Source of the DNA: Macrostomum hystrix
Taxonomy: Eukaryota > Animalia > Platyhelminthes
Assembly (NCBI GenBank): GCA_950097015.1
Contig: CATNEN010000030.1
Location: 1,860,001 to 1,924,000 of the forward strand
Length of the DNA: 64,000 nucleotides
Direction: 5' to 3'
Made by a program: the position numbers and the translations under genes. This document shows positions 37,515 to 62,269 of the stretch, one piece after another. The notes under the pieces are model-generated. The model had not been told where the DNA came from and did not search any database. It saw nothing but the letters and a program-made list of their open reading frames with translations. Position 1 is the stretch's first letter; each line of letters starts with the position of its first letter.

Positions 37515-38553
<1,039 letters not shown>

Positions 38554-38564
38554 TCAAATGCGTG

Positions 38565-38795
38565 TGTGGTTGCTATGGAAGTTGGTTGCTATGGAACTGG
38601 TTGCTGTGGGAACAGGTTACTATGGGAAATGATTGCTGTGTGGAACTGGTTGCTATGTGAAATGGTTGGTATGGGAGCTGGTTGCTATGGGAACTGGTTG
38701 CTATGGGAACTGGTTGCTATGGGAACTGGTTGCTATGGAACTGGTTGCCATGGGAACTGGTTGCTATGGGAACTGGTTGCTATAGGAACTGGTTG
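38565..38795. promoter_or_regulatory. 16-bp minisatellite made of RFX X-box motifs (GTTGCTATGGGAAC) in CDKL1 intron 4
   Basis: Six 14-mers matching RTHNYY-WT-RRNRAC at 38681, 38697, 38713, 38744, 38760, 38776 plus degenerate copies; function untested. Confidence 0.6.
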
Positions 38796-38945
38796 GTATT
38801 TGAAGCATGATCTGGTTTCTATCTAAATTATTAGCGGGTTACTATAGTGAATATGAACAGGTTGCTATCGGAAATACTATGCGCGGTTACAATGGGGAAT
38901 ATTATCTGGCATTATTGGCAATAACGAATAGTAATGTACTAGCTA

Positions 38946-39068
<123 letters not shown>

Positions 39069-39184: not shown

Positions 39185-39500
39185 CTAACCTGTTACAATG
39201 GGACATTACCAATTACGATGGGACATTACCTATTACAATGGGACTTTACCTACGCAATGGGATTTTATCTATTACAATGAGACTTTACCTATTACAATGG
39301 GAAATTACCTATTACAATAGGACATTACCTATTACAATGGGACTTTACCTACGCAATGGGATTTTATCTATTACAATGAGACTTTACCTATTACAATGGG
39401 ACATTACCTATTACAATGGGATATTACCTATTACAATGGGATATTACCTATTACAATGGGATATTACCTATTACAATGGGACATTACCTATTACAATGGG
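39185..39500. repeat. 20-bp minisatellite (attacctattacaatgggac)
   Basis: Direct reading; CDKL1 intron 3. Confidence 0.9.
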
Positions 39501-39580
39501 ACGTATTATTTTGTCGCAACAGTAAATAAGGAAATCACAGTACTTTCGGGACAATAATAGAATCAAATGCAGCGGCTTAC

Positions 39581-39653
39581 ATTGTGCGAATGGCAGAAGC
39601 TGACTGCATCCAACAGTTGGTAGGTGATTTTTCTTATCTGGTTGCGGTCCATT
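39581..39653 (-). CDS. CDKL1: CDKL1 exon 3 (MDRNQIRKITYQLLDAVSFCHSHN)
   Basis: Subdomain VIa; phases fit neighbours. Confidence 0.93.
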
Positions 39654-39737: not shown

Positions 39738-39893
<156 letters not shown>

Positions 39894-39899
39894 TCACCA

Positions 39900-41665
39900 T
39901 AGCAACGGAATATGGATGGTCATAAGAAAAGGATAGGGATGATCATAGCAACGGGATATGGATGATCATAGCAACGGGATATGGATGATCATAGCAACGG
40001 GATATGGATGACCATAAAATGGGATATGGATGATCATAGCAATGGGATATGGATGACCATAAAATGGGATATGGATGATCATAGCAATGGGATATGGATG
40101 ACAATAGCAATGGGATATGGATGACAATAGCAATGGGATATGGATGACAATAGCAATGGGATATGGATGACAATAGCAATGGGATATGGATGACAATAGC
40201 AATGGGATATGGATGACAATAGCAATGGGATATGGATGACAATAGCAATGGGATATGGATGACAATAGCAATGGGATATGGATGACAATAGCAATGGGAT
40301 ATGGATGATCATAGCAATGGGATATGGATGACAATAGCAATGGGATATGGATGACAATAGCAATGGGATATGCATGACAATAGCAATGGGATATGGATGA
40401 CAATAGCAATGGGATATGGATGATCATAGCAATGGGATATGGATGATCATAGCAATGGGATATGGATGATCATAGCAATGGGATATGGATGATCATAGCA
40501 ATGGGATATGGATGACCAAAGCAATGGGATATGGATGACAATAGCTATGGGATATGGATGACCATAAAATGGGATATGGATGATCATAGCAATGGGATAT
40601 CGTTGATCATAGCAATGGGATATCGATGATCATAGCAATGGGATATGGATGACAATAGCAATGGGATATGGATGATCATAGCAATGGGATATGGATGATC
40701 ATAGCAATGGGATATGGATGATCATAGCAACGGGATATGGATGATCATAGCAATGGGATATGGATGATCATAGCAATGGGATATGGATGATCATAGCAAC
40801 GGGATATGGATGATCATAGCAATGGGATATGGATGATCATAGCAATGGGATATGGATGATCATAGCAATGGGATATGGATGATCATAGCAATGGGATATG
40901 GATGACCATAGCAATGGGATATGGATGACAATAGCTATGGGATATGGATGACCATAAAATGGGATATGGATGATCATAGCAATGGGATATCGTTGATCAT
41001 AGCAATGGGATATCGATGATCATAGCAATGGGATATGGATGACAATAGCAATGGGATATGGATGATCATAGCAATGGGATATGGATGATCATAGCAATGG
41101 GATATGGATGATCATAGCAACGGGATATGGATGATCATAGCAATGGGATATGGATGATCATAGCAATGGGATATGGATGATCATAGCAACGGGATATGGA
41201 TGATCATAGCAATGGGATATGGATGATCATAGCAATGGGATATGGATGATCATAGCAACGGGATATGGATGATCATAGCAACGGGATATGGATGATCATA
41301 GCAATGGGATATGGATGATGATAGCAATGGGATATGGATGATCATAGCAATGGGATATGGATGATCATACCAATGAAATATGGATGATCATAGCAATGAA
41401 ATATGGATGATCATAGCTATGAAATATGGATGATCATAGCAATGAAATATGGATGATCATAGCAATGAAATATGGATGATCATAGCAATGAAATATGGAT
41501 GTTCATAGCAATGAAATATGGATGATCATAGCAATGGGATATGGATGATGATAGCAATGGGATATGGATGATCATATCAATGGGATATGGATGATGATAG
41601 CAATGGGATATGGATGATCATAGCAATCTGACATGGATGATCATAGCAATGGGATATGGATGATC
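39900..41665. repeat. 23-bp minisatellite (atagcaatgggatatggatgatc)
   Basis: About 76 units; starts within the X-box-like GTCACCATAGCAAC at 39893-39906. Confidence 0.95.
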
Positions 41666-42469
41666 AAAATATATTTGTCTTAATTACATAATTGAAAATT
41701 GGTATTGAAATATTGTGGCTTTTCGTTTGCGGAGTAATTAAAAAATATAATTTGAAGAAAATGATATTGAAAATATCGCTTTTTTACTGCCCTAAAGCAC
41801 TTTTCGATCATTTCCATGCTCGGCAGGCAGCACGGAGCAGATGGGCGGGGCCAACGAGGACTGCTTCACTCTAATCTGGCAGGGCCAGAAGAGAAGATAG
41901 AAGGGGCTGCCAGCAGCAGAAGCAGGCAGACAGGGAGGATGGGAAGACTGAGGTGAGTACGAGGCGGCGGCACTCGAGCAGGCAGTGCTCAGGTAGAGAA
42001 AGGTGGGGAGGCCGTATAGGTTTGGGAATTTTATCCCTGAGCTGAGCTGTGCGGAGTGAGGCGGGAGAAAGCGATTGCAGGGGGGAGTGGTACGCTTTGG
42101 GGCGGTTGCTATGGATACGAAAAGCAACTCGGATCGCAACACAGGGCTGGGGGAGCATCAGAGCAGATAGGCGACCCGCGCTGTCTCCAAACCCTGCCAC
42201 CTGAGCTGAGCATACTCTGAGTATAGGGCCCGCATCTCCAGGGTATCCGTCAGGAAACTCATGGGATGAGAGAGGGACTTATCCCGCAGCTCATTTTCAC
42301 CTATATAGTCATGCCCTTTTTATCCCGAAATCGAAGACGGAGGGGGCAGAAATTTATTGATTTTTCCAGCCGAACTATGAGCGCAAGACAGGGCGGCGAC
42401 GCGTACGACTCGATTTCACGACGAAGCCGCCCCATTAGTTTGGACCAAGAAGGCTTATATTCGGGGCTT

Positions 42470-45250: not shown

Positions 45251-45553
<303 letters not shown>

Positions 45554-60820: not shown

Positions 60821-61459
60821 ATTTATTAGCTATCTTGATAGTATAATAGGTGATACCAATAGCTTAGTATAACTATCTATTTCTGACTTAGCTAGCTAAT
60901 ATTAGGTAGATTTTTGTTAAGAATTAGGCCATTGACCAGGTAAATTAATGTCAATTAAATTAACCAAAAAGTATCAAAGTTGATATTTAAATTGAAGTTT
61001 CTAATTTATTAAAGCTAAATTTTCATAAGCTAAGTTGTAAAGAAATTGAAAAAATATAGACACTTGAGTCATGGCTATGTTTAAGTTAGCTATATAGTCC
61101 TATATAGGCACTATCCTATATTACCTGTCTGAGCTTAATTAACAAAAATTAGGCCTGTAGTCATACGAGCAAGTTTCATATATAGACAAAAAACAAATAT
61201 AAAGATAAAACATGGCATAGAATTTCACAAAATAAATATTTTAAAATTTATAAATTCAGCTAAAATTGTTTTATGAAGCTAGGCTATAGGCCACTACAGC
61301 ATGCCTAGCTAGATTCTAATAAACTAGATGATTCATTTCTAGGTCATCTGTTCCACTGGAGGCAGCATCAGTGGCAGAAGTTCGAGCATAATCTCACCTT
61401 TTGGCGGTGCACCTGTGCACAGTCTCAGTGGCAGTAGCAACAGTGCTGGCCTTGTTGCC

Positions 61460-62035
61460 ATGACAACAACAACCACTGGCATGGATGCCTCTAGCAGTGG
61501 AATCTGCAGCTACAATGCCACAATGGCAGCTGCAGCAGTCCCGCCATTTTGCAACGATGGCGGCGGCAGTGGCGGGTACATTTCCTTGAGCTATCAGCAT
61601 CCAATGCAGCAGCCGCATCACCAGCAGCTGCAGCAGATGCTGGGCGGCGGTCATGGCTATAGTGATATGCCTCATCATCTGCACAGTCCGCACCTGCATC
61701 ATGTTCAGCCACATAGTCAGCAGCCCCAGCATCTCCTTCATCATCAGCAGCATCAGCACTATGTTCAGCAGTTGCAGCTGCCCCTAACTGAGCCCCTATT
61801 GCAGCCGCAGCAGCAGCAGCATCCCGTTTCCATAGTAACCATTCGCGGTGATGAATTTAATATCGGCGACATCGAGGAAGACGAGGACGATGAGGATGGA
61901 GTGGGTGATGACAGAGACTCGAGTGGTCTATCGTCAGCTATGAGAGACAGTGGCGATTGTGGAAACAACGGCATCGCGCCTCCTAAAAATAGACCGCAAC
62001 GCGGTGGTGGAACTCGTAAATTCAAGGCTGAACAG
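61460..62035 (+). CDS. Fos/ATF3-type bZIP factor, N-terminal exon (His/Gln-rich, acidic); frame open back to acceptor at 61342
   Basis: Open frame ending RKFKAEQ at a cag|gtaaag donor, phase 0. Confidence 0.75.
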
Positions 62036-62269
62036 GTAAAGAAAATTCACATTGTTTATGCTGCTTTGAATATGTTCGCAATTCCAAAGTCAGAGTGTCG
62101 CCGTTTTCAGATGCCAATGGAATTAAAATCCCATCCAAATAGGGGCAGGATCCTCGGTTGTTAAATAACTGATCTGAGTATTGAAATCCTGACATCTTGA
62201 GTTTGAGATCCCCAGGTCTGGGATATGAGATCCATATATCTCGGATATGGGATATGAGATCTGGGATAT

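What the first reader, a model, noticed from the sequence alone, without database searches (positions are those of the whole stretch)
38565..38795. A minisatellite made of RFX X-boxes inside the ciliary kinase gene CDKL1
Seen: the 16-bp unit tgGTTGCTATGGGAAC contains a 14-mer matching the X-box consensus RTHNYY-WT-RRNRAC. There are six full matches (including GTTGCCATGGGAAC at 38744) plus ~6 degenerate ones, immediately upstream of the exon-5 acceptor. Known: RFX/DAF-19 factors activate ciliary genes through X-boxes, and CDKL kinases (Chlamydomonas LF5, C. elegans CDKL-1) control cilium length. Inference: tandem amplification has turned one RFX site into a homotypic, copy-number-tunable enhancer or RFX sponge. 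This suggests the intronic minisatellites of this genome can be regulatory rather than junk.
Basis: partly seen in the sequence, partly recalled or inferred. Interest (0 to 1): 0.75.

Follow-up and report, generated by a model that had tools for sequence, protein, structure and literature searches.

The report
X-box-bearing minisatellite in CDKL1 intron
A short tandem repeat inside a flatworm cilia-kinase gene really does carry six good copies of the binding motif for the cilia regulator RFX, but it looks like one of this genome's countless young, private intron repeats that happened to amplify such a motif, not a purpose-built regulatory device.

Summary
Window 38567-38799 is a 16-bp x 14.6-copy minisatellite. 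Six units match the X-box consensus on both strands. It lies 38 nt upstream of the acceptor of coding exon 5 of a minus-strand CDKL1-like gene.

The motif is credible. The genome encodes at least 4 RFX DNA-binding domains. The exact variant GTTGCYATGGGAAC occurs 57 times against 0 for the reversed control.

The regulatory reading is not supported:
- Tandem arrays cover 38.5% of the window.
- Tandem pairs of X-boxes are barely commoner than pairs of a control pattern (1102 vs 790; palindromic form 62 vs 50).
- Three old CDKL1 paralogues carry different, X-box-free arrays in the same intron.
- Eight of the 14 units have already lost the motif.
- Six sites cannot act as a sponge against about 3,800 similar sites.

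Each paralogue does hold one isolated good X-box inside the gene. A full X-box also sits at the edge of the neighbouring 23-mer array. So the seed was probably a real X-box-class site that was amplified neutrally.

The scan judged a similar case (a CCAAT array in NF-YA) a coincidence on other DNA of this genome. No binding, accessibility or sister-species data could be reached. Interest is low to moderate.

The parts
38567..38799 (.). 16-bp minisatellite, 14.6 copies, consensus TGGTTGCTATGGGAAC on the + strand (GTTCCCATAGCAACCA on the gene strand)
   Evidence: TRF; unit-by-unit listing
38681..38789 (.). Young, homogeneous core of the array. It holds the six full palindromic X-box matches, starting at 38681, 38697, 38713, 38744, 38760 and 38776.
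   Evidence: 1-2 mismatches to GTTGCCATGGCAAC
38800..38900 (.). Strongly decayed copies of the same unit, filling the donor-side half of the intron
   Evidence: read directly
38529..38965 (-). Intron 4 of the CDKL1-like gene (437 nt), from GTGAGT donor to CCCCAG acceptor
38328..38528 (-). Coding exon 5 (activation segment to the alpha-F/G region of the kinase)
   Evidence: 4agu CDKL1 residues 153-219, E 1e-34; boundaries
38966..39056 (-). Coding exon 4 (HRD and DFG motifs)
39581..39653 (-). Coding exon 3
39739..39860 (-). Coding exon 2
45335..45502 (-). First coding exon (ATG at 45502)
   Evidence: 4agu residues 2-57, E 1e-24
39893..39906 (.). Isolated palindromic X-box match GTTGCTATGGTGAC (gene strand), 32 nt upstream of exon 2. 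Its left half is the last unit of the 23-mer array. Its right half is unique flank.
39898..41666 (.). 23-bp x 77 array in intron 1. Every unit carries the X-box half-site GTTGCTATG (gene strand), a 9-mer shared with the 16-mer array.
39188..39502 (.). 20-bp x 16 array in intron 3. It shares the ATGGGA core with the 16-mer.
42105..42118 (-). One-strand X-box consensus match GTATCCATAGCAAC in intron 1

Best explanation
This is an ordinary, young, locus-private intronic minisatellite of a flatworm genome in which about 40% of genic DNA is such arrays. Replication slippage or unequal exchange amplified a 16-bp segment that contained an X-box-class word. That word was most likely a pre-existing intragenic RFX site of this CDKL1 paralogue. 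The six intact copies could bind RFX in ciliated cells. The amplification itself is a neutral by-product of the genome's rampant array formation, not a selected, copy-number-tuned enhancer or sponge. Shown: the array, its motif content, the gene, the genome-wide statistics and the paralogue comparison. Inferred: the seed was an RFX site, the array is neutral, and RFX can bind it.
For: 1. Arrays are everywhere. They cover 38.5% of the window and 41% of the 149 kb sampled. Every intron of this gene and of its three paralogues has its own array.
2. X-box arrays are not enriched. The palindromic form gives 62 against 50.
3. Intron 4 of the three paralogues (C3, C32, C39) holds unrelated arrays with no X-box. 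Only exons align between the paralogues.
4. Decay runs from three identical central units to eight units that no longer match, so individual sites are not being maintained.
5. The word is real. GTTGCYATGGGAAC occurs 57 times against 0 control, about 2.8 expected from base composition, and 51 are dispersed sites with unrelated flanks. Sites within 2 mismatches of the perfect palindrome number 3840 against 436. Four RFX DNA-binding-domain loci exist.
6. A seed was plausible. Each other paralogue has one X-box within 2 mismatches inside the gene, where 0.21 is expected per gene. A full X-box at 39893 is formed by the last unit of the 23-mer array plus unique flank.
7. Neighbouring arrays tend to share cores. 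The 16-mer and 23-mer arrays share the 9-mer GTTGCTATG. Other neighbouring pairs share 9-15-mers (p 0.014-0.06).
Against: - No data on RFX binding, chromatin or expression could be reached, so a real regulatory effect is not excluded.
- The paralogues are old, so absence of the array in them says little about recent selection.
- A chance origin of the match is also possible. With roughly 10^5 arrays, a handful with an X-box within 2 mismatches are expected by chance.
- The only other strong X-box minisatellite in the genome (C1:7038755) has almost the same 14-mer. This could hint at something non-random.
Confidence: 0.55

Rival explanations
1. Pure coincidence. The unit never was an RFX site. 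It drifted from, or was copied from, a local repeat core shared with the neighbouring arrays and happens to fit the X-box consensus. RFX binding is absent or irrelevant.
For: Roughly 100 arrays in this genome should therefore match it, and at least 5 such arrays lie in the first 10 Mb of contig C1. The control pattern gives similar counts. The 16-mer shares cores with the 20-, 23- and 28-mer arrays of the same gene. The scan's CCAAT array in NF-YA was judged a coincidence (s1-348872).
Against: The exact 14-mer is about 18 times over-represented as single-copy sites, so any given occurrence more likely belongs to the non-random class. All four paralogues carry a good intragenic X-box. A full X-box straddles the edge of the 23-mer array.
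Confidence: 0.28
2. The array is a selected homotypic RFX enhancer, tunable by copy number, that raises or tunes transcription of this CDKL1 copy in ciliated cells, or a local RFX sponge.
For: There are six palindromic X-boxes within 1-2 mismatches of the optimum. RFX genes are present. The gene class is a known RFX target elsewhere (PMC5846859). This copy has no other X-box within 2 mismatches in the 20.5-kb stretch scanned around the gene (window 28001-48500), so the array holds its best sites.
Against: X-box arrays are not enriched over control. The array is not shared by the paralogues. Older units decayed freely. The 16-bp period leaves only 2 bp between 14-bp dimer sites, so neighbouring sites probably cannot all be occupied (inference). 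Six sites against about 3,840 similar sites cannot titrate RFX. The array lies 7 kb downstream of the ATG, unlike the promoter-proximal X-boxes of model organisms.
Confidence: 0.12
3. The repeat acts at the RNA level, as an intronic splicing element or structure near the 3' splice site, and not as a DNA site.
For: It ends 38 nt from the acceptor. Earlier notes report that arrays in this genome often hug exon borders (s1-402488).
Against: A plausible branch point (TTGAC) and the acceptor lie in unique sequence between the array and the exon. The paralogues splice the same exon junction with unrelated arrays. No RNA data were available.
Confidence: 0.05

Closest known systems
X-box / RFX (DAF-19) promoter elements of ciliary genes (C. 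elegans, Drosophila, vertebrates)
   Same: A 14-bp imperfect palindrome made of two GTTRCY-type half-sites. The host gene class matches: C. elegans cdkl-1 is expressed in ciliated neurons, 'likely due to' a promoter X-box, and controls cilium length (PMC5846859).
   Different: Known functional X-boxes are single or double and promoter-proximal. Here six copies at a 16-bp period sit in intron 4, about 7 kb downstream of the ATG. They are not shared by the paralogues, and decayed copies lie beside them.
Tandem repeats that work as transcription-factor site arrays (e.g. GGAA microsatellites bound by EWS-FLI, expression-associated VNTRs; from my own knowledge, not checked here)
   Same: Homotypic head-to-tail binding motifs whose number could scale occupancy.
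   Different: Those cases rest on binding and expression data. Here there is only sequence, and the genome-wide counts show no excess of such arrays.
Private intronic minisatellites of Macrostomum genomes (scan notes s1-402488, s1-291362; M. lignano has 15% simple plus tandem repeats, PMC5730564)
   Same: Period, copy number, intron location next to an exon, locus-specific unit, rapid turnover between paralogues, and cores shared with neighbouring arrays.
   Different: The unit coincides with a word that is otherwise strongly over-represented as single-copy sites. Only one other array in the genome does the same (C1:7038755).
CCAAT-bearing minisatellite in the NF-YA intron of this genome (s1-348872)
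   Same: A transcription-factor motif repeated in an intron array of a thematically fitting gene. That case was judged a coincidence.
   Different: The motif here is 14 bp and highly specific. The paralogues carry isolated copies, so a real seed site is more likely than for the 5-bp CCAAT.

Membership tests
X-box (RFX binding site) | Match to the published consensus RTHNYYWTRRNRAC, with two inverted half-sites | tested here: met
   Six units match on both strands and lie 1-2 mismatches from GTTGCCATGGCAAC. One half-site is optimal (GTTGCY). The other (GTTCCC) was the rarest type in the 50 sites listed.
X-box (RFX binding site) | The same word is non-randomly frequent in this genome | tested here: met
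   GTTGCYATGGGAAC 57 vs 0 control; GTTGCYATRGGAAC 71 vs 3; perfect palindrome 264 vs 0.
X-box (RFX binding site) | The organism encodes RFX factors | tested here: met
   Four loci match PF02257 above its cut-off (70-97 bits).
X-box (RFX binding site) | Promoter-proximal position upstream of the start codon | tested here: not met
   The array is in intron 4, about 6.7 kb downstream of the ATG at 45502. There is no consensus match between 45503 and 61453.
X-box (RFX binding site) | Conservation at the homologous position in relatives | tested here: inconclusive
   The three paralogues have no X-box array in intron 4. Two of them have a single X-box somewhere in that intron. The introns are unalignable. 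No sister species could be reached.
X-box (RFX binding site) | RFX occupancy and RFX-dependent expression | not testable with these tools
   No ChIP, ATAC or RNA data were available.
Minisatellite (neutral tandem array) | Head-to-tail units of 10-100 bp with a homogeneous core, decayed edges and a locus-specific unit | tested here: met
CDKL1-4 kinase subfamily | Kinase-domain exons closest to CDKL1 among solved CDKL structures | tested here: met
   Exons were searched one by one by reference, and the joined protein was not built or searched. Four paralogues share the exon structure.
Regulatory tandem-repeat enhancer | Excess of motif-bearing arrays over control motifs, or concentration in target genes | tested here: not met
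   1102 vs 790 and 62 vs 50 pairs. Concentration in ciliary genes could not be tested because only two strong arrays exist and the host gene of the second is unidentified.

The most novel reading that the evidence does not exclude
A recent tandem amplification turned a single intragenic X-box of one CDKL1 paralogue into a six-site RFX cluster. The cluster measurably changes that paralogue's expression in ciliated cells and varies in copy number between individuals. It would be a natural, repeat-encoded dial on a cilium-length kinase.
Probability: 0.12. Interest if true: 0.55.

Novelty: new member of a known kind. Interest (0 to 1): 0.25.

Why it matters
If the array were functional, it would show that this genome's hyper-abundant intron minisatellites can create copy-number-variable transcription-factor clusters. 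It would also give a tractable test case, because Macrostomum has transgenesis (PMC5730564). As it stands, the value is mainly cautionary. In a genome that is about 40% tandem array in genic regions, a repeat unit matching a 14-bp factor motif inside a thematically fitting gene is expected now and then. The genome-wide controls show no excess. A useful by-product is that the X-box is an extremely over-represented word here (264 perfect palindromes against 0 control), so an RFX regulon can be mapped from sequence.

Tried and rejected
1. Sister-species intron. The exon-5 ORF was searched, but the exon is too conserved to pick out flatworms. The contigs fetched were a fish-like CDKL1 locus (L041), a 652-bp metagenome scrap (L040) and two loci of assembly GCA_977066385.1. 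Those two have TG microsatellites and no minisatellites, so they are not Macrostomum-like. None was taken for human, and none was pursued further.

2. Random sampling of the genome for an array census. Much of it had gone on 30 overlapping loci of one array. The background therefore rests on 149 kb and on whole-genome pattern counts.

3. Host gene of the second X-box array (C1:7038755). Pfam and the ESM Atlas gave nothing for its first coding exon.

4. Ciliary enrichment of the single-copy GTTGCYATGGGAAC sites. Pfam families near 29 sites are mixed: BBS2, WD40, SLC26, XPC/Rad4, an eEF1A-like GTPase, a kinase and EGF. No clean conclusion follows.

5. Three-X-box pattern. It was too long for the tool.

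6. Conserved non-coding blocks between paralogues. None were found; only exons align.

7. Exons were searched singly by reference.

8. The flatworm (Macrostomum) identity is taken from earlier scan notes and was not verified here.

Full report
**What is there**

TRF reports one array at window 38567-38799: period 16, 14.6 copies, 85% matches, unit TGGTTGCTATGGGAAC. Read unit by unit, it has:
- a homogeneous core, with three identical units at 38680-38727 and near-identical ones up to 38790;
- eight outer units carrying substitutions or 1-bp indels.

Still weaker copies fill the intron to about 38900. The consensus RTHNYYWTRRNRAC matches six units, each on both strands. They therefore also fit the stricter palindromic form GTYNYYATRRNRAC. 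They lie 1-2 mismatches from the ideal GTTGCCATGGCAAC. The shuffle statistic (22 vs 3.1) overstates it, because the six copies are one amplification event.

**The gene**

The gene is on the minus strand. Exon by exon, by reference, the best solved relative is human CDKL1: 4agu at 120.9 bits against 90.5 for CDKL2 on exon 5, and 87.5 against 69.4 on exon 1. Splice sites give these exons:

| Exon | Window coordinates |
|---|---|
| e1 | 45335-45502 |
| e2 | 39739-39860 |
| e3 | 39581-39653 |
| e4 | 38966-39056 |
| e5 | 38328-38528 |

Intron 4 is 38529-38965, and the array ends 38 nt from its acceptor.

Earlier scan notes call the genome a Macrostomum flatworm. I did not verify that. The assembly is 220 Mb in 42 contigs.

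**Is the motif meaningful in this genome? Yes**

The assembly has four loci encoding an RFX DNA-binding domain above Pfam's cut-off. Word counts against the same pattern read backwards:

| Pattern | Sites | Control |
|---|---|---|
| Palindromic X-box pattern | 3151 | 797 |
| Within 2 mismatches of the perfect palindrome | 3840 | 436 |
| Perfect 14-mer | 264 | 0 |
| The array's own variant, GTTGCYATGGGAAC | 57 | 0 |

About 2.8 copies of the array's variant are expected from base composition. Fifty-one of the 57 are dispersed single sites whose flanks are unrelated. So the unit is a credible RFX site by sequence.

In C. elegans, cdkl-1 is expressed in ciliated neurons, 'likely due to' a promoter X-box, and it sets cilium length (PMC5846859).

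**Is an X-box array more than this genome would make anyway? No**

- Tandem arrays cover 38.5% of the window and 41% of the 149 kb I could sample.
At least five unrelated arrays match it in the first 10 Mb of contig C1.
- For the palindromic form the counts are 62 against 50.
- Many of the 62 come from two dispersed double-X-box repeats, not from minisatellites.
- Only two minisatellites carry a strong X-box. One is this array. The other is a 20-bp x 26 array at C1:7038755-7039257, in the first intron of a gene I could not identify.

**Paralogue comparison**

The genome has four CDKL1 paralogues with the same exon structure. They are old: only exons align, at 75-85% nucleotide identity.

Intron 4 of the other three holds unrelated arrays with no X-box:
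- C3: a 13-mer;
- C32: a 38-mer x 102 and a 23-mer;
- C39: a 16-mer, a 34-mer and a 43-mer.

So the array is private to this copy. However, each other paralogue has exactly one X-box within 2 mismatches inside its gene body: C3 in intron 1, C32 in intron 4, C39 in intron 5. About 0.21 is expected per 12-kb gene at the genome-wide density. All three having one has a probability of roughly 0.007.

In the window's copy, the only sites of that quality are those of the array. In addition, a full palindromic match (GTTGCTATGGTGAC on the gene strand, 39893-39906) lies 32 nt before exon 2. Its left half is the last unit of the 23-bp x 77 array, and its right half is unique flank. This suggests that array grew out of a pre-existing X-box.

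The 23-mer and 16-mer arrays share the 9-mer GTTGCTATG. The 16-mer also resembles the 20- and 28-mer arrays of the same gene (11-12 of 16 positions, p 0.014-0.06). Sharing of cores by neighbouring arrays is general in my sample.

**Reading**

The most economical account is that CDKL1 genes here are probably RFX targets through isolated intragenic X-boxes. In this copy, the genome's ordinary array-making process amplified one such site, or a local relative of it. Nothing points to selection on the array:
- It is young, with identical central units.
- Its older units have drifted out of the consensus.
- Its 16-bp period leaves 2 bp between 14-bp dimer sites, so full occupancy is doubtful (inference).
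- Six sites are about 0.2% of comparable sites, which rules out a sponge in any useful sense.

A pure-coincidence origin remains possible, because a handful of chance X-box arrays are expected among roughly 10^5 arrays. I give it about 0.12.

**Limits**

- The sister species could not be reached.
- The ciliary status of genes next to other X-box arrays could not be tested.
- No fetched contig was taken for human.

**Verdict**

The feature is real, the gene call is correct and the motif is credible. The regulatory interpretation is unsupported and is most likely wrong as a claim of selected function. Earlier notes of this scan reached the same kind of conclusion for a CCAAT array in NF-YA, on other DNA of this genome.

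Noticed in passing
L058, L060-L087 (site at 1501-1514 of each); L081 = G000:C13:573098-576111: Of the 29 dispersed GTTGCYATGGGAAC sites, 18 have their longest open frame in register with GTT GCC ATG GGA (V-A-M-G-T, or V-P-M/I-A-T on the other strand), often over 100 codons. One third is expected by chance. In L081 the site lies inside a coding exon of BBS2. Exonic, frame-biased X-boxes, or X-boxes centred on a Kozak-like GCCATGG, are unexplained.
   Followed up: partly
window 61454-61467 and 61826-61839: Two good palindromic X-box matches lie inside a long Gln/His-rich ORF (61415-62164, + strand), read as V-A-M-T-T and V-S-I-V-T. They are coding-sequence matches, not promoter elements.
   Followed up: partly
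G000:C1:19004793, C1:26444345, C7:1980398, C7:4621988, C8:3079224, C8:3091925, C11:5856930, C38:3034887, C38:3047514, C38:7509942 and others: A dispersed repeat carries two perfect X-boxes separated by the same 8-bp spacer (CCGTGAGG or its complement) at a dozen or more loci. A second family with spacer GCGCTTTG sits at about six loci.
   Followed up: no
G000:C1:7038755-7039257 (L054 1411-1930): This is the only other strong X-box minisatellite in the genome: a 20-bp x 26 array with unit GGTTGCTATGGAAACTCTGA. It starts about 60 nt after the donor of a first coding exon of an unidentified gene. The next array (21-mer, L054 2369-2906) shares TAGCAAC..AGAG with it.
   Followed up: partly
window, C3, C32 and C39 loci: Arrays lying near each other in the same gene often share 9-15-nt cores. 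Examples are C3 3711 and 10536 with a 15-mer, C32 13036 and 14397, and window 27401 and 31111. This suggests local spreading or splitting of repeat units across exons.
   Followed up: partly
G000:C3:6006295-6026294, C32:1089228-1109227, C39:14496321-14516320: Three further CDKL1 paralogues have identical exon structure but fully diverged introns. That makes four CDKL1-type genes in a 220-Mb genome.
   Followed up: partly
G000:C1:24640897, 24652019, 24662037, 24672053: Perfect X-boxes recur at a spacing of about 10-11 kb. This suggests a tandem gene array in which each copy has its own X-box.
   Followed up: no
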